The translations under genes and the position numbers were made by a program. Below are positions 31,919 to 44,552 of a stretch of 64,000 nucleotides of DNA, piece after piece. The stretch lies in IMG/VR virus record IMGVR_UViG_3300005289_000016, positions 212,033 through 276,032 of that record; one strand, written 5' to 3'. Position 1 is the stretch's first letter. Each line of letters begins with the position of its first letter. The notes under the pieces are model-generated. The model was given only the letters and a program-made list of their open reading frames with translations. It was not told the DNA's origin and made no database searches.

Positions 31919-32936
31919 ACTGCAACCCCACTAGGCAGTCTTTGATTGACATGTGTTGCATGATCGCGCTGATGCCCTTCTCAGAGCAGCTACTGATGTA
32001 GGGGCACGTCATACAGGGCGTGTCCTTCAAGTACTCCAGAGACGCATCCAGAGCCTTCTGACGCACTGTCAAGAGGTTCTCCATGGTCCATGGCTTAGGG
32101 ATGGTGAACTCGTCGTCTAGGAACGGGCAATCATCCTTCAAGAAAGGCACCCAGTACAGCTTACCGTCGGTGTACAGCAAGTTGCACATGGTCCCAGTGT
32201 CATAATGCAGGTCTGGGTTACGTCGACGTTCATCCTGACCTTCAAGCTCAGAGTAGTACTGCGTGATGCGGTAACTCATGCGCTTGATCTGCTCACTCAC
32301 CATCAGGGTCTTTTGTTTAACCCGACCGTAAGGGATGTTCAGGATGTCATCTTTGTCCACAGGGAACTCAACGTCAAACCCAGCCCGCATGAACTCCTCG
32401 AACTTGTCGTCCACGGTGTCCTGCGTGCAACTGATAACAAAGCCAGCCTCATTCAAGTACGCCGATTGCATGGTGTTCTTGATGTGGGAAAGCTTCTTAC
32501 CCACCATGTTGCCGAACTTCTCATTGCGGAAGAAGTACGGCGCAGCAGGGATCAGGAAGCGGATAGGCTTACCTGGCACTGATTGATCGATCTCAGCACA
32601 CATACTCGTGTACTTGTCCATGTTCGTCTCAAGGAACGCTGCGTTGAACGTCACCTGATGGAACATCTGAGCCATCTCTTGGAACTCAGGATGGGCCATG
32701 ACCTCATCTTTGTTGCTGGCAGTCATGTAGTCGGTAGGGCCGACACCCAGATCGAACGCCACGTAACCTGCTGTGGTCATTTCCGTCAGCAGGTCCTTCA
32801 GGGCAGCGAGGTCATTGACATCACCGCCCATGGCCTTGTCGATCATGCATCCGGGACAGACGTGTCCGCACCCTCGGAATAGATCAAGCGTGATTTCCAG
32901 CCGCTGTCTGTGCTGGACGAAGTGTGGAGATTCCAT
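31908..32936 (-). CDS. Divergent radical SAM-like protein with Cys-rich C-terminus
   Basis: CGHVCPGC; GPTD; C-terminal CMTCPYISSC...C; paralog of 30854-31918. Confidence 0.75.
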   Translation of the reverse strand: MESPHFVQHRQRLEITLDLFRGCGHVCPGCMIDKAMGGDVNDLAALKDLLTEMTTAGYVAFDLGVGPTDYMTASNKDEVMAHPEFQEMAQMFHQVTFNAAFLETNMDKYTSMCAEIDQSVPGKPIRFLIPAAPYFFRNEKFGNMVGKKLSHIKNTMQSAYLNEAGFVISCTQDTVDDKFEEFMRAGFDVEFPVDKDDILNIPYGRVKQKTLMVSEQIKRMSYRITQYYSELEGQDERRRNPDLHYDTGTMCNLLYTDGKLYWVPFLKDDCPFLDDEFTIPKPWTMENLLTVRQKALDASLEYLKDTPCMTCPYISSCSEKGISAIMQHMSIKDCLVGLQYVQ

Positions 32937-33847
32937 TGGTCAAGTAACCCCTTGAAGCCGTTACAGGAGTGAGTCAGATCTTTCACCTCCCGAAGATGCT
33001 CAGAGAGGCAGTGACCCATGTAGTTACAGGAAGAGCAGTGACCATTGGTCGTGACTGCTTCTTTTTCTTTGGCACACCACGCAAGGTAACCAGCAACGCC
33101 ATCCACATCGAGGAAGAACTCGTTGTCATTGGCATCGAACTCAAGCACAGCCAGAGAGCCCGTCGGTGTGATGTAGAGGTGATCGTCACTGAAGGCATTA
33201 CGCGTACCTTCAGCCGCCTCTTTCACTTGCCGCTCATTCTCAAAGTAGAACTCTCGCTCAGGGTGTTCAATGACAGCCCAGACGAAACGCTCAAACTCAT
33301 CAAACGGCACGTTCTGGGCATTGGCCTGGTTCGTGCTGTAGGGTTTGATCTCGACGTCCTTTGCATTGGCCAGCATGTTCATGGTCTGCACGAACGTATC
33401 GACGCTCACGGTGTCCAGGAACTTGCGAGAGGCCAACGTCAGGATGGTGAAGGGACGCGTCAGCATGAAAAGGTTGTTCAACACCCGGTCATGCATCTCC
33501 CGTGCTTCAAAGTCATACGACACGCTGAGGTCGAAGTCCAAGTCCTCGGTGATCTCGTTGAGCAACGTGAGGTTCGAGACCAACACGATATCATCCAGAC
33601 CGTACCGGTGCAGGATCTCTTTCATCTCCAGCAGGTACTCGGGAGGCAACAGCAGGACTTCCCCACCGTAGATGTCGATGTGCCCAACGTCATAGTGCTC
33701 AAGGATCTCCAGCAGCCTTTCTTCAAAGACGCCCAAGTCCATGCGTGTCCGATCACCCAACTGCTCTGGTGTGAGATAACAGAACTCACAGCGCAGGTTA
33801 CAGTAGTAAGACGGGTTTACGCTGAGGTTGATTTTTGGCTTAGGCAT
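32843..33847 (-). CDS. Radical SAM/SPASM-domain protein
   Basis: CNLRCEFC, YGGEVL and C-terminal CSSCNYMGHC...C; overlaps the next gene by 94 nt. Confidence 0.85.
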   Translation of the reverse strand: MPKPKINLSVNPSYYCNLRCEFCYLTPEQLGDRTRMDLGVFEERLLEILEHYDVGHIDIYGGEVLLLPPEYLLEMKEILHRYGLDDIVLVSNLTLLNEITEDLDFDLSVSYDFEAREMHDRVLNNLFMLTRPFTILTLASRKFLDTVSVDTFVQTMNMLANAKDVEIKPYSTNQANAQNVPFDEFERFVWAVIEHPEREFYFENERQVKEAAEGTRNAFSDDHLYITPTGSLAVLEFDANDNEFFLDVDGVAGYLAWCAKEKEAVTTNGHCSSCNYMGHCLSEHLREVKDLTHSCNGFKGLLDQWNLHTSSSTDSGWKSRLIYSEGADTSVPDA

Positions 33848-34023
33848 TTGATAAGTTCTCGCTGGTAGGGATTCAATGGAACTCCCATGGAATCCTTCAT
33901 TACATCGAGGAAGTCATCCACGTTCTCGGTGCACCGTTTGATGACGACCTTCTTCAAGACCTCAGGGATCTGAAGCTTGAGTTCGTAGCCCGGTGGGAAG
34001 AAAGCCATTTGATCGACGATCAT
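33817..34023 (-). CDS. Small hypothetical protein
   Basis: 68 aa from ATG 34023 after GAGGA. Confidence 0.5.
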   Translation of the reverse strand: MIVDQMAFFPPGYELKLQIPEVLKKVVIKRCTENVDDFLDVMKDSMGVPLNPYQRELIKCLSQKSTSA

Positions 34024-34033
34024 GGTCAAGTCC

Positions 34034-34240
34034 TCAGAGAATCGTGGAACCACTTTCAACTGACTTGGAATGTTTCATAGCCAGTTCATGGATGCTCTTG
34101 CGCAGGTCAACTTCGAAGTCGGCAAAGCCCACCGACGTCATGGTCAGTCCACGAGCCACCAGCTGACGTATGATCGCTTCGCCTTCCCGCTCGAGGGTGG
34201 TGGTAAGTTCTTTCTTCAGTTGTTCATGACCGTATTTCAT
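34034..34240 (-). CDS. Small hypothetical protein
   Basis: 68 aa; starts 2 nt after the stop of the upstream rSAM gene. Confidence 0.6.
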   Translation of the reverse strand: MKYGHEQLKKELTTTLEREGEAIIRQLVARGLTMTSVGFADFEVDLRKSIHELAMKHSKSVESGSTIL

Positions 34241-34242
34241 GG

Positions 34243-35331
34243 TTAGCCTTTCGCGATGAGTTGGACAGATTCGTCCACGTAAGGTGTTGGGATCAGGTAT
34301 TCAGTCTGACCGTTCAATTCAATGATGCGAGGAGCCAGCGTCTTCATCTTCTTGCAATGATGTTCAGCCAGACCCAGTCGTTTAGTGTCAGCCACCGTCT
34401 TACGGCAACCGTTGCACACAGGGAACATCGGACACTCGTTACAGGCGTCCTTCATCGACCACAGTTCTTCCTGATTGCGCAGTGGAGTGAAGAACTCACC
34501 CGCCATCTCTTTCTCGAAGTCGATGGGGTACTTGAGGTCGTCACCAAAGGCTCCACAGGAGAAATACTGGTTGCCCGGTTGCAGACTGCGGATACCGCCA
34601 TCGCAATCACGGGACAGAGGGCAGATGGTGTTCTGCGTCGACAGGCGCTTGACCAATTGCTTGGTGTTGAACTCCCACTGCATGAGACCAGCGTCGTAGA
34701 TTTCAAGGTACTTCTCGTACATGTCAGCCTGAGTGTACATGGTCTCAGCGTTGCCCATGGAGACGCCCTTGTTGAGCACCACAGGACCAGAAGCTACCGC
34801 GTAGTTAACCTTGGCCTCTACGCCCATCCGCTGAGCCAGACGCACCGTGTCAAGGACCGTGTGCTCATTGCTCTTATCGACGACTGCAATGAAGTCAGGA
34901 CGATAGCCAATGCGCTCAAGGAACAGATCACTGACTGCCCAGAACTCTTCTTCAGTGAACGGCGTCTTATCGCCCTTGAGGCGTGCATCGCCGTACTGGA
35001 ACGAGGTCGTCACACCCAGACGTGGATGACGGAACAACTCTTCCCACATCTCAGGCTTCTTGTAGAAAGGCCAGAGGTTGCTGGTGAAGGAGATCGACGC
35101 ATCGGACTCCAGACGGTCTAGGATCGCGATCAGGTCCCAGTAATACTGCACAGGCATCATGAGAGGGTCACCGCCGTTAACGATGATGGTGCGCGTCTCA
35201 GGGTACCGTACGATGAACCGTTCCACATCCTCCAGACTCACGACCTCATTGGCGTCATCGGTCAGGTAGGTGCTGGAGCAAAAGGTGCACTTGAAGTTAC
35301 ACCGCTGCGTCGGCTTTAGGATCAGGTCCAT
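34243..35331 (-). CDS. Radical SAM/SPASM-domain protein
   Basis: LKPTQRCNFKCTFC, NGGDPLM; SPASM-like CPLSRDC...SCG...CNECPMFPVCNGC...C. Confidence 0.9.
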   Translation of the reverse strand: MDLILKPTQRCNFKCTFCSSTYLTDDANEVVSLEDVERFIVRYPETRTIIVNGGDPLMMPVQYYWDLIAILDRLESDASISFTSNLWPFYKKPEMWEELFRHPRLGVTTSFQYGDARLKGDKTPFTEEEFWAVSDLFLERIGYRPDFIAVVDKSNEHTVLDTVRLAQRMGVEAKVNYAVASGPVVLNKGVSMGNAETMYTQADMYEKYLEIYDAGLMQWEFNTKQLVKRLSTQNTICPLSRDCDGGIRSLQPGNQYFSCGAFGDDLKYPIDFEKEMAGEFFTPLRNQEELWSMKDACNECPMFPVCNGCRKTVADTKRLGLAEHHCKKMKTLAPRIIELNGQTEYLIPTPYVDESVQLIAKG

Positions 35332-35512
35332 CGGTGTTCCCCTTGTTCTCGTATTTGCCCGTCCAGACACCAAGGTAATCTCGACGGAATTGTTCGTGCT
35401 CTGGACTACGCGCTTCCTCTAACTTCTTACGAAGCCAGGTATCGTCACCCAGCTTACGAGGGAACCGAGGTACACGTGGTAGGCGACGCATTGGTAGGAT
35501 GGGGTCGGTCAT
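35297..35512 (-). CDS. Small basic hypothetical protein
   Basis: 71 aa MTDPILPMRR; SD GGAG; TATGAA 20 nt upstream. Confidence 0.5.
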   Translation of the reverse strand: MTDPILPMRRLPRVPRFPRKLGDDTWLRKKLEEARSPEHEQFRRDYLGVWTGKYENKGNTDGPDPKADAAV

Positions 35513-35531
35513 GGATAACACTCCAGATATA

Positions 35532-35537
35532 TTCATA
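35532..35537 (-). promoter_or_regulatory. Candidate late promoter core inside the rSAM cluster
   Basis: TATGAA in AT-rich context, just downstream (minus sense) of a hairpin. Confidence 0.45.
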
Positions 35538-35568
35538 GGAATGTTTGAGTGAAGTTTTAAATAGCGGA

Positions 35569-35593
35569 CATAGGGGAGGGACGAGCCCTCCCC
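35569..35593 (-). terminator. Hairpin/terminator inside the rSAM cluster
   Basis: ggggaggg-acgag-ccctcccc immediately after the stop of 35598-36596. Confidence 0.6.
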
Positions 35594-35597
35594 GAGT

Positions 35598-36596
35598 CTA
35601 CAAGACGACTTTGAACATCTCTCGGATAGAGCAGACCTTGGACTTGCTGTCCAAGACCTTGTCGTGCAGGAAACAACGCAGCCCACACCGGGAGTAGTAC
35701 TCGCACTCAAAGCAACCGTAATGTTCCACGAATGCAACCTCAGCAGCGTCCTTGGCAATCAAGCCTTCAGTCTCGTCTAAGATCGCATCCTTACCTGCTT
35801 CAGACCAACAGGTACTGATCACGCCATCCTTGTTGATGATCTTGGTGGAGCGACACGTGGTCTCATTGATCACGTTGTTCTTCCAGTCCTTGATCGGATA
35901 CGAGTTCGGGTACTTGTTGTTCAGCGCAATGTACATCGTGCTGATCAGGTCTTCGTCAGGTTGGTGATGCAGGTACATCTGACTGGGGATGTAATGATCG
36001 AAGTACACATCGTACCGTTCACACATCTCAGCAAACTCCTCGCCTTCTTTACCGTCAAGGAATGTCTGGATGTTCTGTTTGGTGATCACCACGTTGACCG
36101 TCTGGACCAGATCACCCAGCGTCTCGAGGTTCTTGAAGAACAAGGCTCGTTGAGCAGGATTGAATCGACCAGCGGGGTCATAAGACGTGGCCAGCCAGAC
36201 ACGCTCATCAATCACCCGAAGGCGTTCGATAAGGTGCCTGACTCGGTCAGTGTTGTGATAAACGAGGTTCGTGCCAAAGACCAGTTTGATGTGCTTGAAG
36301 TGACTCAAGGCCATCTTGCCGGCTTGGTAGTAAGCTTCGAAGAGTTCGTCGCTCACCTCGTTCATGAACAGTTCACCGCCTGTGAAGTTAACCACCATGG
36401 CTGTGTCTGGATGTGTAGTCGCCAACAACTTAGCAACCTTGTCGATCACTAGATCCCCGTCGAGACCCACTTTGGAATCGTGGTCCTGGTGGCAGAATGA
36501 GCAGCGCATGTTGCACAGCTCGAACAGAATCAGGTGAGCTTCTTTCCACTTACCTTTCTTCTCACGCAGGATGTCTACAACAGGGATCAGGTTCAT
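35598..36596 (-). CDS. Radical SAM/SPASM-domain protein
   Basis: CNMRCSFC, TGGELF; C-terminal CRS...TC...CFECEYYSRCGLRC...C. Confidence 0.85.
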   Translation of the reverse strand: MNLIPVVDILREKKGKWKEAHLILFELCNMRCSFCHQDHDSKVGLDGDLVIDKVAKLLATTHPDTAMVVNFTGGELFMNEVSDELFEAYYQAGKMALSHFKHIKLVFGTNLVYHNTDRVRHLIERLRVIDERVWLATSYDPAGRFNPAQRALFFKNLETLGDLVQTVNVVITKQNIQTFLDGKEGEEFAEMCERYDVYFDHYIPSQMYLHHQPDEDLISTMYIALNNKYPNSYPIKDWKNNVINETTCRSTKIINKDGVISTCWSEAGKDAILDETEGLIAKDAAEVAFVEHYGCFECEYYSRCGLRCFLHDKVLDSKSKVCSIREMFKVVL

Positions 36597-37654
36597 TACC
36601 AGTTCGCTCCCTTGACGCAGTCCTTCAGGACGTCGACTTGTTCCGACAGGATGTACCGCACGAGGTTCTCGTCGTACTTGCCGGAGTCAGCGTTAGGCAG
36701 AGCCAGACGCTTGGCACCTTTGAACATGGTCAGCACCCGCTGCTTCAACACCTCAGGATCAAGGAGGTCTTCATCGGACGTGAGCAACTGATAGACCAGT
36801 CGAGTACGGCCCGCAGTCGGACCCTCGTCGCAATGATCCAACACGGTGATCAGTTCCAGAAGCAGGCCCTTGATCCACACGTCCGTTGGCTTGTTGTCGA
36901 ACAAGTTCGGCTGGAGGAACATGGTGCTGTTCAGGTAGTGGAAGTTCAACGTACCTTCGAACACGCTCTGCCCATTGAGCAGGGTGTTCATGTCAGCACC
37001 GGCGAAGTCCCAGGCTTCCGGGTTGGCGATCTGACGACCCCATACGTCGAGAGCATCGTAGCCGTTGGCCAGCGCGATGCGACGCAGGATGTTCTTCAGA
37101 GTCTTTGGCAGCTTGCCCACACGGTTGTCGGTGAACAGACGCATGATGCGCCATTCCAGCGACAGCGAGTCTGGGTTTTCAGTAACCAGCTCACCGAACA
37201 CTTCCTGATGAGGATCTTCGAACGCGAACAGTTCTTGAACGACCTGCTCGTTGATGGTCACTTCGTTCAGGATGTTGGTGGTCGGCTTGTGCATGTTCAG
37301 CAGCGACACCTGGAAGGTAGCCTTCTTGCAGAGCATGATCCAGCGGAACACGTCGATCGTGACGTTAGGCATTACTGCCTTGACCAACATGGTGTACAGG
37401 CGCAGGTAGGTCTGACCGTCGACGTAGACGAACACCTTGTCGTCTTGGCTGAAGATCTTGTCGAACAGGTCCTTGAACACATCGCCTTCAAGCGCGTCCA
37501 GAGACACCGCATAGCCAAGTTGCTCAGAACTCTCCTCGTACTCCGCCGGGTGATACTCAAAGCCCACACGTGGACTGATGGTGGCGTACGGAATACGCTT
37601 ACGTGAGATACGGGATTCGATCTCGACGTAGATTCGGTCACGCAGATGGTACAT
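36596..37654 (-). CDS. Hypothetical protein in radical SAM cluster
   Basis: 352 aa; SD AAGGAG before ATG 37654; strong codon bias. Confidence 0.75.
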   Translation of the reverse strand: MYHLRDRIYVEIESRISRKRIPYATISPRVGFEYHPAEYEESSEQLGYAVSLDALEGDVFKDLFDKIFSQDDKVFVYVDGQTYLRLYTMLVKAVMPNVTIDVFRWIMLCKKATFQVSLLNMHKPTTNILNEVTINEQVVQELFAFEDPHQEVFGELVTENPDSLSLEWRIMRLFTDNRVGKLPKTLKNILRRIALANGYDALDVWGRQIANPEAWDFAGADMNTLLNGQSVFEGTLNFHYLNSTMFLQPNLFDNKPTDVWIKGLLLELITVLDHCDEGPTAGRTRLVYQLLTSDEDLLDPEVLKQRVLTMFKGAKRLALPNADSGKYDENLVRYILSEQVDVLKDCVKGANW

Positions 37655-38480
37655 GTTCAATCTCCTTGACCGTCTTGTTCATCTGCTCAACAAGAGCATT
37701 GAACTGTTCAGGGACTTCCTGACCGATCAAGGCCATGAAGAAAGGGTTGTTCTGGTGAGCGAAGAACGCAAACAGGTTGGCCCCAGCGAAGCAGTATTCG
37801 TTGAAGAACAACTTGTTCCAGTTCCAATCGCTCTCTTCGATGCCCATGCAGACCAACGGGAAGTTGTCATGAGCAATCAACTTGACGAAGTTCAGACCTA
37901 CGAGGCCTTCTTCTTCATCTTGCGGGTAGTTCAGGACTTCTGACTTGAGGTCTTCTTTGCACTGGAAGGCATAAAGCGGCAACGAGTCCAGACGCCGGAG
38001 CCACAGGTCGACGAGGTCGTAGTTGGCTTCGATGAATGGCACTGGATCGAATGGCAGACTGAACGGTTTCCCGGTAGCCGCCAAGATCACGTTGATGGCC
38101 AACTCTTCCAGATCGCTGATGCTCACCAGTACAGTGGACTTGAGATAAGCCACCAGCAGGTTCTGCATGATCGTCTGGTCACCGAACTTCAACCGTACGG
38201 CGATGTTCAGGTTGGACAGGTACGTGATGAGCGCAGCGTCCTTCAGCCGACTGTTGTCAAGGCTGATGTGGAACTCTACGTTCTCGGTGAATTTGCGTTT
38301 TAAGTCGATGACCGGAATCGGTGCAATGGTCTGGATGACCACCAACCCATCGGGCTGTACGACTACTGTTGATGGCTCTTTGGGCAAGTCGTCAACAGAT
38401 GGTTCTTTGGACATGCGAGATCCTCCCCACATTGGGTTACTACGGCCGGCATTAGCGTGACAGTTAGAATGGCATGACAT
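37638..38480 (-). CDS. Hypothetical protein with two in-frame starts (38480 and 38414); long form begins MSCHSNCH
   Basis: AGGAG 6 nt before ATG 38480 and GGAGGA 6 nt before ATG 38414; same frame, no stop between. Confidence 0.75.
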   Translation of the reverse strand: MSCHSNCHANAGRSNPMWGGSRMSKEPSVDDLPKEPSTVVVQPDGLVVIQTIAPIPVIDLKRKFTENVEFHISLDNSRLKDAALITYLSNLNIAVRLKFGDQTIMQNLLVAYLKSTVLVSISDLEELAINVILAATGKPFSLPFDPVPFIEANYDLVDLWLRRLDSLPLYAFQCKEDLKSEVLNYPQDEEEGLVGLNFVKLIAHDNFPLVCMGIEESDWNWNKLFFNEYCFAGANLFAFFAHQNNPFFMALIGQEVPEQFNALVEQMNKTVKEIEHVPSA

Positions 38481-38570
38481 GACGAACTCCTAATGAACAT
38501 CAATACATACCAAACTAACTAGCAGTGTCTTTTAACGACGACCACGTGCGCAGTGACAGTTAGAATGGCA
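38457..38570. repeat. 18-bp exact direct repeat encoding CHSNCH
   Basis: gtgacagttagaatggca at 38457-38474 and 38553-38570. Confidence 0.95.
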
Positions 38571-39071
38571 ACTGGTGTGGCAGATGACGTTCGATACTGC
38601 CAACGGGCTGGCACGGCAGTAGGCGTTGTAGTAGTTCCACAACTCATCGCAGCTTGACTGGAAGTTACTCAAGTCCAGGATAGCGCCCTTATAAAGGGTC
38701 GACAGCGGCGCCGCCGAAGCAAAGTCACCAACACCGTACGCCGAGTTAGCCACCGCAGTACCGTCGTAGATCAGTTGGTTACCGAGCTGATAGTGCGACC
38801 GGTAGATCAGGATACGCATCAGACGGATGTTACCGAAGACGTTTGCGAAGTTACGCAACACAGCCTTGGCCTGCGCAGCGGCAGGAGCACCCGCTTGGAA
38901 GTTACCAGCCCCTACTGTTTCAGCACGGCCGTTGGTATCGCCGTAGAACCAGCCTGGAATAGATCCGGCTGGGTAGCTGTTGGTACCCCACGAGATACCA
39001 GAATTGCATCGAGCCCGGATACGCGCCATGGCTTCAACGCCCATGCGGTTCCGTGTAAGTACTTCGGCCAT
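38532..39071 (-). CDS. Putative virion/tail protein with C-terminal Cys/His repeat (candidate modification substrate)
   Basis: 179 aa rich in G/A/N/Y; ends ICHTSCHSNCHCARGRR. Confidence 0.7.
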   Translation of the reverse strand: MAEVLTRNRMGVEAMARIRARCNSGISWGTNSYPAGSIPGWFYGDTNGRAETVGAGNFQAGAPAAAQAKAVLRNFANVFGNIRLMRILIYRSHYQLGNQLIYDGTAVANSAYGVGDFASAAPLSTLYKGAILDLSNFQSSCDELWNYYNAYCRASPLAVSNVICHTSCHSNCHCARGRR

Positions 39072-39072
39072 A

Positions 39073-40107
39073 TCACACCTTTAGAATCAGGTTGGATTGT
39101 TGATTGCGACCCGAGAGGTAACGCAAGGTGTTCTTCAGTCCACCGCACCGCCCACTCTGCCATGGCAGACGGTGGCAGTCACCGCCGCACAGGTCAGACA
39201 CGTCGCACGCAAGGCATTCATCTGCCCAAGTCAACTCCTTGGCGATTTGCTCCACACGACCATCGGACTTGAGGAAGACTTCTACCCCCTCATCCATTTT
39301 GGCATGATGCAGTCGAGCAGCCGAATTCGGGCAGCCAGACAAAGAGCCGTCGGAGTTGATGGTCACCAGATTCTGCTCACAGTTGCGGCAGTTGGTGTCC
39401 ACCTTGACTACGTTGTTCTTCAGCTTCTCCTCGATGATGTCGAGGGTCTTGATCTTGTACGTTGGGTTGCGGGCCTTATACCGGTGGTACAGTGCGAGGT
39501 ACCAGTTGTCTTGCTCTTCGTTGTCCGGGAAGATCGACATGTTGACTTCAGCGTTACCGTCAACTGTCAGGCGCTCCAGAGACACGTCATCCACCGCGAA
39601 GCTGTCCAACTGGTCGAGCAGCCAGTCAGGGGTGGACTTGATCAACTCACGGCTCACAGAGACCTTCAGGGCAATGTGCACGCCATGACTGCGGAGCAAC
39701 TCAAGGTTGTTCTTCCACAGGTTGAATTGTTTCTCGTTACTCCATCGAATCCAGTGATCCCAGCTGGTGCCAATAACGCTACCGAAGTAGTCCTTGATGA
39801 AGTCGAGGTGAGCATCCGTGATCTTGAAAGTCAGGTTGCTGTTCGCACACATCGAGACATGCGGGTTGTCGAAGAAGTTATCGGCGTACCGCTTCAGCTT
39901 TTCCAGAGGTACGAGGAACGGCTCACCGCCATGGAACTCCATGTGGTAATGCGTACCCTCAGGGTACTTGGACATGAACTCTTTCACCCAGCCCGCAGTT
40001 GCATCGGGATCGAACTGGGTCTTGTCACCGTTCTTGCCATTGGTAAAGCAATGCTTGCAGTCCAGATTGCAGGAACCAGTGGTTTTGACATAAATGGTTT
40101 TGTTCAT
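39073..40107 (-). CDS. Radical SAM/SPASM-domain protein
   Basis: VKTTGSCNLDCKHC, FHGGEPF; SPASM-like CRNC...GCPN...CLACDVSDLCGGDC...C. Confidence 0.9.
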   Translation of the reverse strand: MNKTIYVKTTGSCNLDCKHCFTNGKNGDKTQFDPDATAGWVKEFMSKYPEGTHYHMEFHGGEPFLVPLEKLKRYADNFFDNPHVSMCANSNLTFKITDAHLDFIKDYFGSVIGTSWDHWIRWSNEKQFNLWKNNLELLRSHGVHIALKVSVSRELIKSTPDWLLDQLDSFAVDDVSLERLTVDGNAEVNMSIFPDNEEQDNWYLALYHRYKARNPTYKIKTLDIIEEKLKNNVVKVDTNCRNCEQNLVTINSDGSLSGCPNSAARLHHAKMDEGVEVFLKSDGRVEQIAKELTWADECLACDVSDLCGGDCHRLPWQSGRCGGLKNTLRYLSGRNQQSNLILKV

Positions 40108-40108
40108 G

Positions 40109-40621
40109 TTAAAGCTTCTTCTCTAGGAACTGCTCCAAGCCAAAACTCAGCATGATGGAGCTGTCAACGTTGATGGCCCGATGGTAGGTACCGCGAGGGA
40201 TGAATAGCGAATCCCCAGCCGACAGTTCTACCTGCCCATCTGGAGACTCAAAGACTTTGCGACCCTGGACCATGTAAATGATCACATCGTCGGGGTCGGT
40301 ATGCATGGTGAAGCTCTTCGAATCCTTGGGGGACAAGAAGAGATGACAGGACACAGGACCGTTGTGGTTAAAATGTCTGCCCAGTCGACGACATTCCTCG
40401 AACATGATGAAGTTCAACCGCTCAAAGCCTTCGACCTTGATGGGTTTGGTTTCACCATGCTCGAGGTAGTCGAGAGGACTCAAGGCCCCGTACGACTTGT
40501 CGTTCTCGATGTACTTGACCAACTGCTGCTCGTACGGATGAGGACTGTCGAAGAAACGGTCGAGTCCCAAGGATGCCTCGGTGATGCCGATAAACTCGTG
40601 ATCGTCCAATCTCTTCAACAT
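40109..40621 (-). CDS. JmjC/cupin_4-type 2OG-Fe(II) oxygenase
   Basis: FTMHTDPDDV (HxD), MVQGRKVF and LSAGDSLFIPRGTYH (distal H). Confidence 0.8.
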   Translation of the reverse strand: MLKRLDDHEFIGITEASLGLDRFFDSPHPYEQQLVKYIENDKSYGALSPLDYLEHGETKPIKVEGFERLNFIMFEECRRLGRHFNHNGPVSCHLFLSPKDSKSFTMHTDPDDVIIYMVQGRKVFESPDGQVELSAGDSLFIPRGTYHRAINVDSSIMLSFGLEQFLEKKL

Positions 40622-40645: not shown

Positions 40646-42091
40646 TTAGTCTTGCCACAGCGCAGGCCATACTTGACGCCACGCACCACCGCCCCAGATG
40701 TAGACCCCAGATCCGTTCCAGTGCACCGAGCAGTCAAAGCCTGCTGCGTTCTTCGGAGCGTAGCGGGCATCGTGGTCAGCCGAGTTCAAGTGATCGAACA
40801 TGGCGCCTGCCGTGAGCAGGTAACCATCGGAGTTGACGGTTCGGCCACGGGTGATGGCGTTAGGGATGTTACTCAGGCCCACTTGTGTTTTAGTCACGTT
40901 GTGCGGGTTGCTGTAGTTCTGGATGTGGCTGTTGAGCAAGGTGCCTGCGATAGCAGTGATCGCGTCCTTGGTTCGAGCCGGCGTCATGAAGCGGTCCGTC
41001 AAGATACCCGCTTCCGCCTCAGCTTTGGTGGCTGTCTGGAAGTTGTCTACCAGACTGAGTCCGACTTGAGCTTTGGTGGTGTTGTGCGGGTTGTTCTTGT
41101 CGTTGACGTGGTTCTGGATCAACGTACCGGCATGCACCATGATTGCTTGGTACACACGCAACGGCGTCATGAACACATCGTTGGCCGTCCCACCTTCCGC
41201 CTGTGCCTGTGTGGCAGTCAGGAAGTTGTCCACGTTACCAAGTCCGACTTGGGCTTTGGTCACGCTGTGTGGGTTGTTCTTCTTGGCTTCGTGAGCATCC
41301 ACGAGTTCCTGAGAGATCCGGTTGGCCAAGATCGACACGAGTGTCGGAGTCATGTAGCGGTTAGCCACCACACCTGCCAGGGCTTCAGCGTTCGACGCGA
41401 TCTGATAGTTCTCAACCAGACCCAAACCGACCTGAGCTTTCGTGGTCTTGTGTGGGTTGTTGAAATCGTTCAGGTGAGCATCGACCTTGTCGTCCACGGC
41501 ATCGATGTTCGCTTGCAGCTGGTCACGGATGATCTGCATCTGCTGACGCAATTCATCGTGAGACGCTTCATCACCTACCAAAATGGCGTTGGTGATCCGC
41601 TCCAGTTGCCACACGACGTATTCCCACCCGTAGGTATCGCCGATGTCGTGGATGTGCGGAGCAGGCGGATAAGCGGTAGGACGACCAATGATCGAACCCC
41701 ACTTGATCGGACGCTCATCGAGGTTAACCTGTTCGAGCAAGTCAGCCAGCGCTGCCAAGTTCCAGGAGTACTCGCCACCCACAACCTGATAGCTGATCTC
41801 GACCGTGATCGGAGCCTGCAACTTGATGACGACCGCACACTGCACGTCCTTACCGCTTCGCAAGGAAGCCTGAGAGAACGGCTGTGCCAGTACAAAGTCA
41901 TCAACCGGTACCAGCGGGAGGCCAGTGTCCACGTTGATGATGGTAAAGGAGCCGGTGTAGAACGGGCCTGCCTTGGGTACGAACACTCGTGCGGTATTCG
42001 TGGTGATTTCCCGTCGCTCACCGACAATCAAGTTCGTCGGTGACGTACCGTCTAGATCAAGAGGGTACTGGATAATCGGTGGTACACTCAT
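40646..42091 (-). CDS. Tail fibre protein with HxxxxxNPHxxTKxQVGL repeats
   Basis: 481 aa; 4 repeats; C-terminal YIWGGGAWRQVW; N-terminus homologous to 42162-44552. Confidence 0.8.
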   Translation of the reverse strand: MSVPPIIQYPLDLDGTSPTNLIVGERREITTNTARVFVPKAGPFYTGSFTIINVDTGLPLVPVDDFVLAQPFSQASLRSGKDVQCAVVIKLQAPITVEISYQVVGGEYSWNLAALADLLEQVNLDERPIKWGSIIGRPTAYPPAPHIHDIGDTYGWEYVVWQLERITNAILVGDEASHDELRQQMQIIRDQLQANIDAVDDKVDAHLNDFNNPHKTTKAQVGLGLVENYQIASNAEALAGVVANRYMTPTLVSILANRISQELVDAHEAKKNNPHSVTKAQVGLGNVDNFLTATQAQAEGGTANDVFMTPLRVYQAIMVHAGTLIQNHVNDKNNPHNTTKAQVGLSLVDNFQTATKAEAEAGILTDRFMTPARTKDAITAIAGTLLNSHIQNYSNPHNVTKTQVGLSNIPNAITRGRTVNSDGYLLTAGAMFDHLNSADHDARYAPKNAAGFDCSVHWNGSGVYIWGGGAWRQVWPALWQD

Positions 42092-42161: not shown

Positions 42162-44552
42162 TCAGGCGAACAACGGCATGGAGGCGTCGATGACTGTGAT
42201 CAGTTCGTCGCACATCTTGCCAATGGAGTCGTCCACCTTGGCCGTGGTAGAGGCCGGCGTCATGATCAGGTTGGTTGCAGTACCGGTAATCGCTTGAGCG
42301 TTGGTCGCCGCCGCGTAGTTCGGCACACTGCCCAACCCTACTTGCGCCTTGGTCACGGCCTGAGGGTTATCGCGACGAGCGTCGAATGCCTTCAGTGCAG
42401 CAATTTCAGTCGCAGGGTCGGTGACGACCGCCGGGTAGACGATGTTGGCCGGTTGAACCGTAATGAGGTCAGACACCTCATCCCACACTGGGAACGTCGC
42501 CGCTACAAATTTCTTGTAGGTCAGCTCCGTGATGCACAGGCGGTTACGGGTACCGGTTGCCTTCAGCCAGATTTCCATCTTAGCCGAGGTATCCGTCCCT
42601 ACCGACACGACACCGATCTCGATCGGCTTGTCGCCCTTGGACAATTGGGTTACCCGCATGCCTTTAGGAATCATCAAGAACGGACCAGCTCCGTCGATGT
42701 TGTCATACACCGCACCAATCTCAACCAAGAGCGTGTGGTGCTGGAACTCGCCCAGTGCTTCGTCATCACGACCGCCAGTGATCATCAACGTGACGTCAGC
42801 GGTTTGATCGGATGCCGAGTGAGACAGTTCACCCAACTTGACCCAATGAGTCGGAGGCAGAACCTCAGTCCCCGAGCCGTTGTCGAGCATCGGCATTGGA
42901 GGGACGTCTGTCTGGATCGACGCACCAGAGACCGCACTGTTAATGTCAGCCTTTACTTCAGGGTAGGTCTTGCCATCGAACTTATCGGTGTCAGCTGCCT
43001 TACCACTGAGGATGTCGGCTTTGGCTTGCGGGTAGTTCTTACCGTCGAACTTCAGCGCGTTACCGGCGTCGATGGTCGCGATCCAAGCCTGCAATTGAGC
43101 CTGGGTCAGGTTGTAGACACGGCTGGAGTTAGCCGCAGTGCCATTGACATCCAAGCGCCCGTTGATCAGATCATCGATCTCTTGTTCGGTGTACGTGCCC
43201 ACCTGCGCCGCAGTAACATGGTGCGGGTTGGTGTAGTCCGTGACGTGCGCGTTGGAGCTGTCACCCACCAGTTCGTTGATCGCGTACCGGACAGCCAGAG
43301 GCGTCATGTAACGATCGTTGGCCGTAGCCGCACGAGACTCAGCTTCAGTAGCCACCGCGTAGTTCTGGACAGAGCCCAGTCCGACTTGGGACTTAGTCAC
43401 GCTGTGTGGGTTGTTGAAGTCCTGAACGTGGTCCTGAACTCCCGAACCGACAGTCTGGCTCAATACGTAAGCCAGCAGACGAGGTGTGATCACACCCGAG
43501 TCGTCCACACCAGACAAGGCTGCCGGGTTGGTCGCGATGCCGATGTTCACCACGTTACCCAGACCGACTTGGGCCTTGGTTGTTTGGTGAGGGTTGTTCT
43601 TGTCCGCGATGTGGTTATCGAGTTCGACCCCGACAATCGCTTCGATCGCTTCACGAGTCCGCAGGGGAGTCATGTAACGGGCGTTGGACGAACCAGCCTC
43701 TGCTTCAGCCTGAGTGGCCAATGCAAAGTTCTGCACACTGCCAAGGCCGACTTGAGCCTTAGTGGTCTGGTGCGGGTTGTTCATGTCCGCCAAGTGCAGA
43801 TTAAGCGCTGCGGTGGACACGGCGTCAATCAACTGCTTAGTACGCAGAGGCGTCATAAAGCGGTTGTTAGCCACACCAGCCTGAGCTTCACCAACGGTAG
43901 CCGTCGGGAAGTTATCGACCAGTCCCAGCCCTACCTGAGCCTTGTTGACTTCGTGTGGGTTAGCTTTGTTGGCGATGTGGTCTGCCAAGCCCCCGGCGTT
44001 CTTTTGAAGGATCGCCTTTTCGATGTCATCCAGCTCGTCGACCACTTCCGACATGCCGACGAAGTCGTCAATGTTGAAGTCGTGGTTGACCACCGGGAAT
44101 TCACGAGGCAGTTCGACCACCTGTTCCCAGTTCGCAATGCGCGGGTTGAACGCCACGTTAAGCAGAAGCTCGTTGAACTTCTGATCGTCCAATACCCAAT
44201 CGTCACCGATGGTCTGGTACTCCATGCGGAGTTGACCTTCAAGGTTACGATCGTAGAACGTAATGGCGCCGTAGACCGGCAAACCAATGGTATGAGACGC
44301 GTAAGCGAAGTGATAGCCGAAGTTGAAGTGCTCGCCCTCATTGAGGGGAGTACCCAAGGCTGGGTTGTTGACGTTGGCACCCTGCGGATACAGTCGCAGT
44401 TTCACGCTGTCAGCATAAAACGGACCGCTACGCGGAATGATGTAATAGTGATCGAACGTACCTCTCGAACGAATCGATTGGGTTTCGGTCACCTTGTTTG
44501 TTGCCGCGACACCCGTCGGATCGAAAGGGTATTGTGGAAGGACAGTACTCAT
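42162..44552 (-). CDS. Tail fibre protein with NPHxxTKxQVGL repeats
   Basis: 796 aa; 6 repeats plus short A-N/D-x-x-K-F-D-G-K fibre repeats. Confidence 0.8.
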   Translation of the reverse strand: MSTVLPQYPFDPTGVAATNKVTETQSIRSRGTFDHYYIIPRSGPFYADSVKLRLYPQGANVNNPALGTPLNEGEHFNFGYHFAYASHTIGLPVYGAITFYDRNLEGQLRMEYQTIGDDWVLDDQKFNELLLNVAFNPRIANWEQVVELPREFPVVNHDFNIDDFVGMSEVVDELDDIEKAILQKNAGGLADHIANKANPHEVNKAQVGLGLVDNFPTATVGEAQAGVANNRFMTPLRTKQLIDAVSTAALNLHLADMNNPHQTTKAQVGLGSVQNFALATQAEAEAGSSNARYMTPLRTREAIEAIVGVELDNHIADKNNPHQTTKAQVGLGNVVNIGIATNPAALSGVDDSGVITPRLLAYVLSQTVGSGVQDHVQDFNNPHSVTKSQVGLGSVQNYAVATEAESRAATANDRYMTPLAVRYAINELVGDSSNAHVTDYTNPHHVTAAQVGTYTEQEIDDLINGRLDVNGTAANSSRVYNLTQAQLQAWIATIDAGNALKFDGKNYPQAKADILSGKAADTDKFDGKTYPEVKADINSAVSGASIQTDVPPMPMLDNGSGTEVLPPTHWVKLGELSHSASDQTADVTLMITGGRDDEALGEFQHHTLLVEIGAVYDNIDGAGPFLMIPKGMRVTQLSKGDKPIEIGVVSVGTDTSAKMEIWLKATGTRNRLCITELTYKKFVAATFPVWDEVSDLITVQPANIVYPAVVTDPATEIAALKAFDARRDNPQAVTKAQVGLGSVPNYAAATNAQAITGTATNLIMTPASTTAKVDDSIGKMCDELITVIDASMPLFA

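What the first reader, a model, noticed from the sequence alone, without database searches (positions are those of the whole stretch)
38415..38570. The CHSNCH motif is duplicated as an optional N-terminal extension of the next gene
Seen: an 18-bp exact direct repeat (38457-38474 and 38553-38570). The second copy is read as MSCHSNCHANAGRSNPMWGGSR, in frame with the downstream 258-aa ORF. Both ATG 38480 (AGGAG, 6-nt spacer) and ATG 38414 (GGAGGA, 6-nt spacer) have good SDs, and a TATG lies about 26 nt upstream of 38480. Inference: two isoforms, one carrying a substrate-like or decoy copy of the motif (second substrate, autoinhibitory pseudosubstrate, or metal-sensing leader). It could also be a remnant of a local duplication.
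Basis: partly seen in the sequence, partly recalled or inferred. Interest (0 to 1): 0.72.

Follow-up and report, generated by a model that had tools for sequence, protein, structure and literature searches.

The report
Tail-motif copy heading the neighbour gene
A jumbo phage gene carries, at its very start, a conserved 22-codon copy of the Cys-His tail motif of the gene before it, behind an RNA hairpin and followed by a second start site. It probably makes the protein in a long form carrying the motif and a short form without it, which gives a handle on an unstudied radical-SAM gene cassette common in phages.

Summary
Gene A (38532-39071) ends ...CHTSCHSNCHCARGRR. Gene B can start at ATG 38480 (MSCHSNCH...) or at ATG 38412-38414.

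- **Repeat:** the 18-bp repeat is exact and not expected by chance.
- **Not a recent neutral duplicate:** eight distinct relatives (B 71-94% identical) keep the extension in frame and stop-free. They show synonymous changes, only in-frame length changes, and both Shine-Dalgarno sites.
- **Origin:** these relatives form one clade. Its sister, L132, lacks the insert and uses the first Shine-Dalgarno site directly.
- **Independent case:** a second B clade (L006 group) starts M-x-C-H-S-S constitutively.
- **New element:** spacer bases 38506-38521 pair with extension codons 2-7 (38461-38476), enclosing the first Shine-Dalgarno site and ATG. The hairpin covaries and is absent in L132.
- **Context:** A's tail, (CHxS)3-RGRR, is invariant in a large phage family. 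That family always sits in an oxygenase-rSAM-A-B-C-rSAM cassette beside tail-fibre genes.

My best reading is a translated, hairpin-gated long isoform. It would present a copy of A's tail to whatever recognises that tail. The function is untested. The closest analogues are the lambda S107/S105 dual start and the bacterial HXS and triceptide rSAM systems. Membership of the latter two was tested and not met.

The parts
38532..39071 (-). Gene A, 179 aa. A globular domain followed by a flexible C-terminal tail. It belongs to a large phage family that ends (CHxS)3-RGRR-COOH.
   Evidence: ORF. The alignment of 40 homologues has C164, H165, C168, H169, C172, H173, R176, R178 and R179 invariant. The AF2 model has pLDDT 89.1 with the last ~15 residues at low confidence. 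The profile finds 816 cluster representatives.
38535..38582 (-). A's tail motif, CHTSCHSNCHCARGRR. The stop codon is at 38532-38534.
38553..38570 (-). Repeat copy 1 (TGCCATTCTAACTGTCAC, encoding CHSNCH), inside A's tail.
38481..38531 (-). 51-nt non-coding spacer between A and B. It is homologous to the spacer of L132.
   Evidence: Two in-frame stops. A 1-nt indel among relatives occurs only here, at 38494. Alignment.
38506..38521 (-). 5' arm of the RNA hairpin (TAGTTAG-TT-TGGTATG).
38487..38491 (-). First Shine-Dalgarno site (AGGAG). It is the ancestral ribosome-binding site of B and lies in the apical loop of the hairpin.
   Evidence: Conserved in all relatives. In L132 it directly serves the core start.
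38415..38480 (-). The 22-codon N-terminal extension of B, MSCHSNCHANAGRSNPMWGGSR. ATG1 is 38478-38480.
38457..38474 (-). Repeat copy 2 (CHSNCH), codons 3-8 of the extension.
38461..38476 (-). 3' arm of the RNA hairpin (CATGCCA-TT-CTAACTG), covering extension codons 2-7.
   Evidence: 14 pairs, 95.9% of cells paired. Three pairs changed on both sides, and 0 of 500 shuffles reached the covariation score. It is the minimum-free-energy structure in WIN, L128, L125 and L124, with z from -2.6 to -3.4.
38421..38426 (-). Second Shine-Dalgarno site (GGAGGA), inside the extension and 6 nt before ATG2.
   Evidence: A GGAG or GAGG is kept 7-10 nt before ATG2 in all four linker versions, although the amino acids differ.
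37638..38414 (-). B core, 258 aa from ATG2 at 38412-38414. It matches phrog_20767 and always follows A.
   Evidence: PHROG hit maps residues 32-253 of the long form. Synteny holds in more than 80 loci. AF2 pLDDT is 87.9 with no known fold match.
39073..40107 (-). Radical SAM enzyme with a SPASM-like domain, directly upstream of A.
   Evidence: Pfam Radical_SAM, phrog_1802, and weak NCBIfam hits.
40109..40621 (-). Cupin / JmjC-like oxygenase, the first gene of the cassette.
36596..37660 (-). Gene C, about 352 aa, with no known family. It overlaps B's end and is a conserved cassette member.
32843..36596 (-). Three further radical SAM paralogues (35598-36596, 34243-35373, 32843-33847) plus two small ORFs.

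Best explanation
**What it is.** The 22 codons at 38415-38480 are a real, translated, optional N-terminal extension of protein B.

**Origin (inferred).** In one ancestor of this phage clade, the end of gene A was copied in frame onto B's start codon. The copied piece was A's last ~13 codons plus a short junction with its own Shine-Dalgarno site and ATG. The copied stop codon was then lost.

**Layout (shown).** The result is two in-frame starts.
- ATG1 (38480) keeps B's ancestral Shine-Dalgarno site. It would give a long form that begins M-S-C-H-S-N-C-H, followed by a variable, probably flexible linker.
- ATG2 (38414) has its own conserved Shine-Dalgarno site. It would give the core protein, as in phages without the insert.
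- A conserved RNA hairpin (38506-38521 paired with 38461-38476) encloses the first Shine-Dalgarno site and ATG1.

**Regulation (inferred).** The hairpin makes the short form the default. The long form would be made at a lower or conditional level, for instance when ribosomes finishing A, 10 nt upstream of the hairpin, open the stem.

**Function (inferred).** The long form presents a copy of A's Cys-His tail unit. A's tail is the invariant, flexible (CHxS)3-RGRR end of a probable fibre-associated protein encoded among several radical SAM enzymes. Whatever recognises A's tail would therefore also recognise the copy on B. The most likely candidates are the cassette's radical SAM maturases. B would then become a second substrate in cis, or a tethered mimic.
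For: **Retention.**
- The extension is in frame and stop-free in 8 distinct relatives with B 71-94% identical.
- These relatives form one clade (support 100/98). Its sister L132 lacks the insert but has the same spacer and first Shine-Dalgarno site.

**Coding constraint.**
- 8 of 12 variable sites are third codon positions (p=0.019). Outside the hairpin arm the count is 5 of 7 (p=0.045).
- Length variants are 22, 20, 20 and 17 codons, all in frame.
- In metagenome contigs the only frameshifting indel lies in the spacer, not in the extension.
- The motif codons differ from A's copy at synonymous sites in relatives (14-16 of 18 identical). Gene conversion is therefore not what keeps them alike.
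- The first 8 codons are conserved while the linker varies.

**Both starts.** AGGAG before ATG1 and a GGAG/GAGG 7-10 nt before ATG2 are kept in every version.

**Hairpin.**
- 14 pairs with 95.9% of cells paired; compensatory changes at 3 pairs; slid controls pair at only 28-58%.
- z-scores run from -2.6 to -3.4 in four relatives, against +0.5 in L132.
- In relatives the spacer complements the extension copy, not A's copy.

**Independent recurrence.**
- The L006 clade starts MTCHSSSNRRF / MNCHSS / MSFHST directly after A's stop and a strong Shine-Dalgarno site. One member has no alternative Met.
- P0047 carries QCHANG at residues 11-16.

**Specificity and context.**
- Among real genes, CHxxCH occurs only in A and B in the whole genome.
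- The A-B pair and the rSAM cassette are conserved in more than 80 loci and in isolated jumbo phages.
Against: - There is no transcript, ribosome or peptide evidence. Only DNA metagenome runs hold relatives.
- The hairpin sequesters ATG1, so the long form could be rare or absent.
- Two gene callers chose ATG2 (P0002 and P0005).
- The statistics rest on few, related sequences, with p values of 0.02-0.05. Part of the conservation in codons 2-7 can be explained by the RNA pairing alone. In L128 the second CH is lost while the pairing is kept.
- The A+B complex prediction gave no answer.
- A and B have no recognisable fold relatives. Nothing shows that B or the rSAM enzymes touch A's tail.
- Most of the wider family lacks any extension, so it is dispensable for the cassette's basic function.
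Confidence: 0.45

Rival explanations
1. The feature is selected at the RNA level only. The hairpin acts as a 5'-UTR or intercistronic structure for mRNA stability, processing or coupling to A's translation. B is made only from ATG2, and the open frame with the CH peptide is incidental to the duplication that supplied the 3' arm.
For: The hairpin has covariation and significant stability in every extension-bearing relative and is absent in L132. In L128 the second CH codons changed while the spacer changed with them to keep pairing. ATG1 is flanked by stems. Gene callers picked ATG2 in two assemblies.
Against: Codons 8-22 lie outside the hairpin. They still show third-position bias and only in-frame length changes, with no stops. 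ATG1 and its Shine-Dalgarno site are strictly kept, although one point mutation would remove an unwanted start. The L006 clade has the same peptide with no second start and no such spacer.
Confidence: 0.2
2. It is a neutral remnant of a local duplication that has simply not yet decayed. Neither the peptide nor the structure has a function.
For: The order of elements is tail, stop, spacer, SD, ATG, then tail', ex-stop, short spacer', SD', ATG'. That is exactly what a tandem duplication of the A-B junction would leave. The extension is absent in most of the family. The L121 insert occurs in only two near-identical sequences, and its sisters lack it.
Against: The extension has survived B-core branch lengths of up to 0.27 changes per site, and core divergence to 71% identity, with no frameshift or stop in any of 8 lineages. 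The spacer acquired at least 5 changes towards complementarity with the extension relative to L132. Synonymous-site divergence with a conserved peptide is seen both here and in the L006 clade.
Confidence: 0.12
3. The extension is translated but acts as a metal ligand, not as an enzyme substrate. A's (CH)3 tails would form a metal-binding tip in a trimeric fibre-like assembly, and B's N-terminal CH units would supply extra ligands that dock B onto that tip, as a chaperone or adaptor.
For: One A-family member carries a Peptidase_S74 tail-fibre intramolecular chaperone right after four CHxS units. Another is fused to a Gly_rich_2 domain. The cassette always lies next to tail-fibre genes. B follows A as assembly chaperones follow fibre genes. 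From my own knowledge, His-based metal sites are known in T4 fibre tips. The reference list of PMC2938197 cites the solved T4 short tail fibre structure under a title describing a trimeric metal-binding fold.
Against: It does not explain why up to seven radical SAM enzymes and oxygenases are always co-encoded with A. The B gene is still present beside the S74-bearing A. No complex was predicted. No structural similarity to fibre tips was found.
Confidence: 0.18

Closest known systems
Lambda S gene dual-start motif (S107 antiholin / S105 holin, with the upstream sdi RNA stem-loop). Recalled from my own knowledge, not tested here.
   Same: Both have two in-frame start codons in a phage gene, each with its own ribosome access. 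In both, an RNA stem-loop at the first start sets the ratio, and the longer product differs only by an N-terminal extension that changes its behaviour.
   Different: The extension here is 17-22 residues, against 2 in lambda. It is a copy of the neighbouring protein's tail motif, and the hairpin's 3' arm is the motif-coding sequence itself. B is not a holin, and nothing shows that the long form opposes the short one.
Bacterial HXS anti-phage system, HxsA-D (Nat Commun 2026, PMC13128918)
   Same: Both have a protein with tandem His-x-Ser units encoded together with paralogous radical SAM enzymes and a non-enzymatic partner. In HXS the HxS motif is covalently modified and basic residues flank the repeats.
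   Different: Here the unit is C-H-x-S, repeated three times at the extreme C-terminus and followed by RGRR. The cassette is phage-encoded and sits beside tail-fibre genes. There is no peptidoglycan-binding domain. The HxsA and HxsD models do not match, and HxsB and HxsC match at 18-27 bits against cut-offs of 268-370.
Triceptide (three-residue cyclophane) RiPPs made by rSAM/SPASM synthases such as YhhB, HaaB and HtkB (PMC11499958)
   Same: Both have repeated His-x-x units beside an rSAM enzyme with a SPASM-type domain. YhhB, AmcB and FxsB are among the best NCBIfam hits of the rSAM next to A. In triceptides the known chemistry links His-C2 to the C-beta of the third residue.
   Different: The hits are far below family cut-offs (50 bits against 445). 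The putative substrate is the tail of a folded 179-aa protein, not a leader-core peptide. An invariant Cys precedes each His. No chemistry is known for this system.
Phage tail-fibre gene followed by its assembly chaperone (for example T4 gp37-gp38 or lambda stf-tfa). Recalled from my own knowledge.
   Same: B always lies immediately after A, usually overlapping or a few nucleotides away, in the host-recognition region. One A relative carries a fibre-type intramolecular chaperone domain.
   Different: There is no sequence or fold similarity of A to fibres or of B to known chaperones. The B gene persists beside the S74-bearing A.

Membership tests
HXS system (HxsA/B/C/D) | HxsA effector: His-Xaa-Ser repeat protein (TIGR03979) with a peptidoglycan-binding domain | tested here: not met
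   A has no NCBIfam or Pfam hit, even at E<=10. HxS-like units are present, but as C-H-x-S repeated three times at the C-terminus.
HXS system (HxsA/B/C/D) | Paired rSAM maturases HxsB (TIGR03978) and HxsC (TIGR03977) scoring above the curated cut-offs | tested here: not met
   The best hits are 26.6 bits against a cut-off of 370 (HxsB) and 23.5 bits against 267.9 (HxsC).
HXS system (HxsA/B/C/D) | HxsD partner protein (TIGR03976) | tested here: not met
   Neither B nor gene C has an NCBIfam hit.
Triceptide / cyclophane-forming rSAM RiPP systems | rSAM/SPASM synthase of the YhhB, Xye, Grr or Fxs families | tested here: not met
   YhhB scores 50.5 bits against a cut-off of 445, AmcB 43.8 against 425, and FxsB 40.2 against 370. 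The SPASM domain scores 25.7 against 27. This is general rSAM/SPASM-like similarity only.
Triceptide / cyclophane-forming rSAM RiPP systems | Substrate with repeated aromatic/His-x-x motifs | tested here: met
   A's tail has H-T-S, H-S-N and H-C-A. The family consensus is H-x-S three times. The extension has H-S-N and H-A-N.
Triceptide / cyclophane-forming rSAM RiPP systems | A C-C cross-link between ring carbon and C-beta of residue 3 | not testable with these tools
   Needs mass spectrometry or NMR of co-expressed proteins.
Dual-start phage genes (lambda S type) | Two in-frame start codons, each with a ribosome-binding site, conserved among relatives | tested here: met
   ATG1 with AGGAG and ATG2 with GGAG/GAGG are present in all 8 relatives.
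Dual-start phage genes (lambda S type) | An RNA structure at the first start that can set the ratio | tested here: met
   The hairpin encloses the first Shine-Dalgarno site and ATG1. It shows covariation, and its z-scores run from -2.6 to -3.4. Its effect on initiation is inferred.
Dual-start phage genes (lambda S type) | Both products made, with different activities | not testable with these tools
   No RNA or protein data are available.
Tail-fibre protein plus downstream chaperone | Physical A-B complex through A's C-terminal end | tested here: inconclusive
   The complex prediction scored 0.00, and the tool's verdict was 'no answer'.
Tail-fibre protein plus downstream chaperone | Fibre-type domains in A | tested here: inconclusive
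   The window's A has none. The relative P0200 carries Peptidase_S74 at 44.8 bits against a cut-off of 22.

The most novel reading that the evidence does not exclude
The phage (CHxS)n-RGRR tail proteins, matured by phage radical SAM enzymes, would be the viral counterpart of the bacterial HXS defence effector. Both would be HxS peptides acting at the cell envelope or during DNA entry. B's hairpin-gated N-terminal copy of the motif would then be a built-in mimic: a cis-substrate, decoy or antidote that tunes or protects this machinery. If so, this locus is a natural experiment showing which residues the maturases recognise.
Probability: 0.1. Interest if true: 0.9.

Novelty: new variant of a known kind. 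Interest (0 to 1): 0.62.

Why it matters
The A-B-rSAM cassette is common. The A profile finds 816 cluster representatives, the motif occurs in more than 119 viral contigs, and isolated Pseudomonas, Ralstonia, Burkholderia, Agrobacterium and Sinorhizobium jumbo phages carry it. Every record I saw annotates A, B and gene C as 'hypothetical', with only generic labels (radical SAM, cupin, oxygenase) on the neighbouring genes. It sits in the host-recognition region of these genomes.

Its one invariant feature is the Cys-His tail. Evolution has copied that tail onto the neighbouring protein at least twice and kept it there. That points to the minimal recognised unit, roughly S/T-C-H-S-N/S, and gives a short natural peptide to test with the rSAM enzymes.

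The hairpin with two starts is also a compact case of isoform control that can be tested directly with reporters.

The 2026 finding that bacteria use an rSAM-matured HxS-repeat protein to block phage DNA entry makes a phage-borne HxS-like system timely.

Tried and rejected
- **A+B complex prediction:** no answer, so not used as evidence.
- **Fold searches for A and B:** only their own uncharacterised families matched (PDB Foldseek, AFDB clusters, VIA wide, Atlas). B's N-terminal half is weakly STAS-like at TM of 0.25 or less, which I do not rely on.
- **Atlas feature lead 'tSAM_targ_Cxxx_rpt':** score 0.40 and no Pfam hit at E<=10, so dropped.
- **TATG as a phiKZ-type late promoter:** TATG occurs 48 times in 261 upstream regions, against my rough estimate of about 78 expected from sequence length alone. 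It shows no positional peak. No sigma-70-like promoter or intrinsic terminator lies between A and B.
- **The spacer pairing with A's own copy as an alternative switch:** rejected. In relatives the spacer complements the extension copy and mismatches A's copy.
- **Gene conversion keeping the two copies identical:** rejected. Relatives have 14-16 of 18 identical, so the window's 18 of 18 is one combination of synonymous choices.
- **ATCUN-type N-terminal metal site (X-X-His after Met removal):** unlikely, because several relatives have Asn at position 2, which should retain the Met (my own knowledge).
- **RNA data:** only DNA metagenome contigs hold relatives.
- **Metagenome scan with the broad B alignment:** failed because no stretch was conserved enough. 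The narrower alignment gave 5 loci.
- **L121 insert (MTCHATRSWR...):** left as ambiguous. It occurs in only two near-identical sequences, contains a 10-bp palindrome, and its sisters lack it.
Full report
**1. The observation**

All genes here are on the minus strand.
- Gene A (38532-39071, 179 aa) ends ...ICHTSCHSNCHCARGRR*.
- A 51-nt spacer follows, with two in-frame stops.
- Then comes AGGAG, 6 nt, and ATG at 38480. This opens MSCHSNCHANAGRSNPMWGGSR.
- That runs without a stop into GGAGGA, 6 nt, and ATG at 38414 (MSKEPSV...), the 258-aa core of gene B.

The 18-nt repeat (38457-38474 and 38553-38570) is exact. It is not expected by chance: the expected count is 0.06 even allowing three mismatches, and 0 of 100 shuffles reached two copies. 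In the whole 276-kb phage record, the peptide pattern CHxxCH occurs only in A's tail and B's extension among real genes.

**2. What A and B are**

The window is the last 64 kb of an IMG/VR jumbo-phage record. Read along the minus strand, the local order is:
- two tail-fibre-like genes
- a cupin/JmjC oxygenase
- a radical SAM enzyme with a SPASM-like domain
- A
- B (phrog_20767)
- an unknown 352-aa gene C
- three more radical SAM paralogues

The same cassette is present in several isolated phages: Pseudomonas phage pPa_SNUABM_DT01, Agrobacterium phage Atu_ph07, Sinorhizobium phage Phosso, Ralstonia phage RSF1 and Burkholderia phage SURPRISE13. In those records A, B and C are all 'hypothetical'.

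A's C-terminal motif is remarkably constant.
- In an alignment of 40 diverse A proteins, the only invariant columns are the three Cys-His pairs and three Arg of the tail.
- A profile of the family finds 816 cluster representatives in the 1.84-billion-protein library.

Both proteins fold confidently. A has pLDDT 89 with the last ~15 residues at low confidence, meaning a flexible tail. B has pLDDT 88. Neither resembles any solved or named fold.

Three A-family variants are informative:
- one has 13 CHxS units;
- one has four units followed by a Peptidase_S74 tail-fibre intramolecular chaperone;
- one is fused to a glycine-rich domain.

The locus of the S74 variant still has the full oxygenase-rSAM-A-B-C-rSAM set beside tail-fibre genes. 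A published survey of pelagimyophages noted rSAM cassettes in the host-recognition cluster without assigning a function (PMC7029224).

**3. Is the extension kept in relatives?**

Yes. A protein search found close relatives of B, and I fetched their contigs. Eight distinct sequences, with B 71-94% identical to the window's, all carry an in-frame, stop-free extension:

| Relatives | Extension, then core start |
|---|---|
| Window | MSCHSNCHANAGRSNPMWGGSR / MSKEP |
| L138 | MSCHSNCHVNAGRSNPMWGGSR / MSKEP |
| L124 | MNCHSNCHLNAGRSKPMWGGSR / MPKEP |
| L129 | MNCHSNCHVNAGRSNPMWGGSR / MPTNP |
| L127 and L130 | MSCHSNCHASAGNNPMWRNR / MP(S or N)NP |
| L125 (L126 and L136 have the same junction) | MSCHSNCHASQGPQWLRKPS / MPDNP |
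| L128 | MSCHSNTALRPGWSQKE / MTDTPEV |

On a maximum-likelihood tree of B cores, these eight form one clade (100/98). L132 is its sister (99/94). L132 has the homologous spacer and AAGGAG, but its ATG is followed directly by TDTPEA, which matches the second start of L128.

So the extension is an in-frame insertion of 17-22 codons at the ancestral start codon. The first Shine-Dalgarno site is B's original one.

The order of elements fits a tandem duplication of the A-B junction followed by loss of the copied stop:
- first unit: tail, stop, spacer, SD, ATG;
- second unit: tail', former stop, short spacer', SD', ATG'.

Beyond the 18 identical bases, the copy still reads GGN-CGT-NGT against A's GGT-CGT-CGT.

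**4. Is the extension translated?**

Several indirect lines say probably.
- Among the four closest sequences, 8 of 12 variable sites are third codon positions (p=0.019). Outside the hairpin arm the count is 5 of 7 (p=0.045).
- All length variants are multiples of three.
- In metagenome contigs laid on the region, the only 1-nt indel lies in the spacer (38494), and none lies in the extension.
- The motif codons differ from A's copy at synonymous sites in relatives (14-16 of 18). The likeness is therefore held at the peptide level, or by the RNA pairing described below, and not by gene conversion.
- ATG1 and its Shine-Dalgarno site are invariant, although one mutation would abolish an unwanted start.
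- A GGAG or GAGG stays 7-10 nt before ATG2 in all four linker versions, even though the encoded residues differ (WGGSR, WRNR, LRKPS, WSQKE). This argues that ATG2 is used too.

**5. Independent recurrence**

In a distant B clade (L006 group), B starts directly after A's stop and a strong AGGAG. The starts read MTCHSSSNRRF..., MNCHSSRYF... or MSFHSTS..., and A's tail in that clade ends SCHSSRGRR.
- The Ser codons differ in family between the two copies (AGC against TCT).
- One member has no internal Met.
- The first 15 codons are nearly identical between members that are 84% identical overall, while the linker after them diverges.

In that clade the extension is constitutive. P0047 has QCHANG at residues 11-16. 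A third case, L121 (MTCHATRSWR...), is ambiguous. Most of the wider family has no extension: B starts 6-10 residues before the conserved TAPI motif.

**6. A new element: an RNA hairpin**

Folding the junction shows that spacer bases 38506-38521 (TAGTTAG-TT-TGGTATG) pair with 38461-38476 (CATGCCA-TT-CTAACTG, extension codons 2-7). The first Shine-Dalgarno site and ATG1 lie in the enclosed 29 nt.
- It is the minimum-free-energy structure in the window, L128, L125 and L124, with z-scores from -2.6 to -3.4. At most 3 of 200 shuffles folded as well. It is absent in L132 (z=+0.5).
- Across seven sequences, 95.9% of cells pair and three pairs change on both sides. These are A-U to G-C in L124, L129 and L128, plus two more in L128, where codons 7-8 changed. 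The covariation score exceeds all 500 shuffles, and slid controls pair at only 28-58%.
- The sample is small and related, so this is good but not final evidence.
- In relatives the spacer matches the extension copy and mismatches A's copy, so the pairing is downstream.
- Relative to L132, the spacer has moved by at least five substitutions towards complementarity.

**7. Mechanism**

*Shown:* the two starts, both Shine-Dalgarno sites, the conserved open frame, the hairpin, and the copy of A's tail unit.

*Inferred:* the hairpin limits initiation at ATG1, so the core protein from ATG2 is the default. The long form would be made at a lower or conditional level. Ribosomes terminating on A, 10 nt upstream of the 5' arm, may open the stem. 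The long form would carry a tail-like S-C-H-S-N-C-H peptide on a flexible linker, presenting it to whatever recognises A's tail.

The most likely candidates are the co-encoded rSAM enzymes. Their best named relatives are anaerobic sulfatase maturase, the cyclophane-forming YhhB, AmcB and FxsB, and PapB, all far below family cut-offs. His-x-x units are the substrates of His-modifying triceptide synthases (PMC11499958). HxS repeats are matured by rSAM enzymes in the bacterial HXS defence (PMC13128918). Membership of either system was tested with the curated models and not met, so the resemblance is one of logic only.

A metal-ligand role at a fibre-like tip is a serious rival. So is an RNA-only role for the insert.

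**8. Verdict**

The feature is a new variant of the dual-start theme, of which lambda S107/S105 is the classic case (my own knowledge). It sits inside a widespread, uncharacterised phage rSAM cassette that deserves study in its own right.

Noticed in passing
window 38535-38582 (-), and loci L005-L123: A's tail, (CHxS)3-RGRR-COOH, defines a very large phage protein family: 816 cluster representatives and more than 119 viral contigs. The Cys-His pairs and the Arg residues are the only invariant columns. Many marine contigs carry two tandem ~128-aa copies.
   Followed up: partly
P0086, P0200 (locus L146:6001-6948), P0105: Three A-family variants stand out. One has 13 CHxS units. One has four units followed by a Peptidase_S74 tail-fibre intramolecular chaperone, and its locus keeps the whole cassette including B. 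One is fused to a Gly_rich_2 domain.
   Followed up: partly
window 32843-40621 (-): The cassette holds a cupin/JmjC oxygenase, four radical SAM paralogues of phrog_1802 and an unknown 352-aa gene C. It is conserved from T4-like marine phages to soil jumbo phages. RSF1-like phages add DHFR-like and 2OG oxygenase genes.
   Followed up: partly
junction region in L124, L129, L138 and the window (38461-38531): The spacer plus the first extension codons group the window with L138, and L124 with L129. The B core groups the window with L129, and L124 with L138. The junction module has therefore been exchanged by recombination.
   Followed up: no
L121:780-860 (-): The A-B spacer of L121 holds an in-frame MTCHATRSWR... 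reading and a perfect 10-bp palindrome, GGAGCTGGCG-CA-CGCCAGCTCC. Its sister lineages (L145, L107) lack the insert.
   Followed up: partly
window 40646-42091 and 42162-44552 (-): These are two tail-fibre-like proteins with many repeats of an NNPH..TKAQVGLG..N unit, directly upstream of the cassette.
   Followed up: no
window 37654-37660 (-): Gene C is listed from a TTG at 37660. By comparison with relatives of 351-352 aa, it probably starts at the ATG two codons later, overlapping B's end by 17 nt as in the relatives.
   Followed up: no
window 38506-38509 (-): The TATG 26 nt before ATG1 is conserved in all relatives, including L132. It lies inside the hairpin's 5' arm. TATG is not enriched upstream of genes in this genome.
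   Followed up: yes
window 38430-38432 (-): A third in-frame ATG (codon 17, in P-M-W) is conserved in most relatives but has no Shine-Dalgarno site.
   Followed up: no
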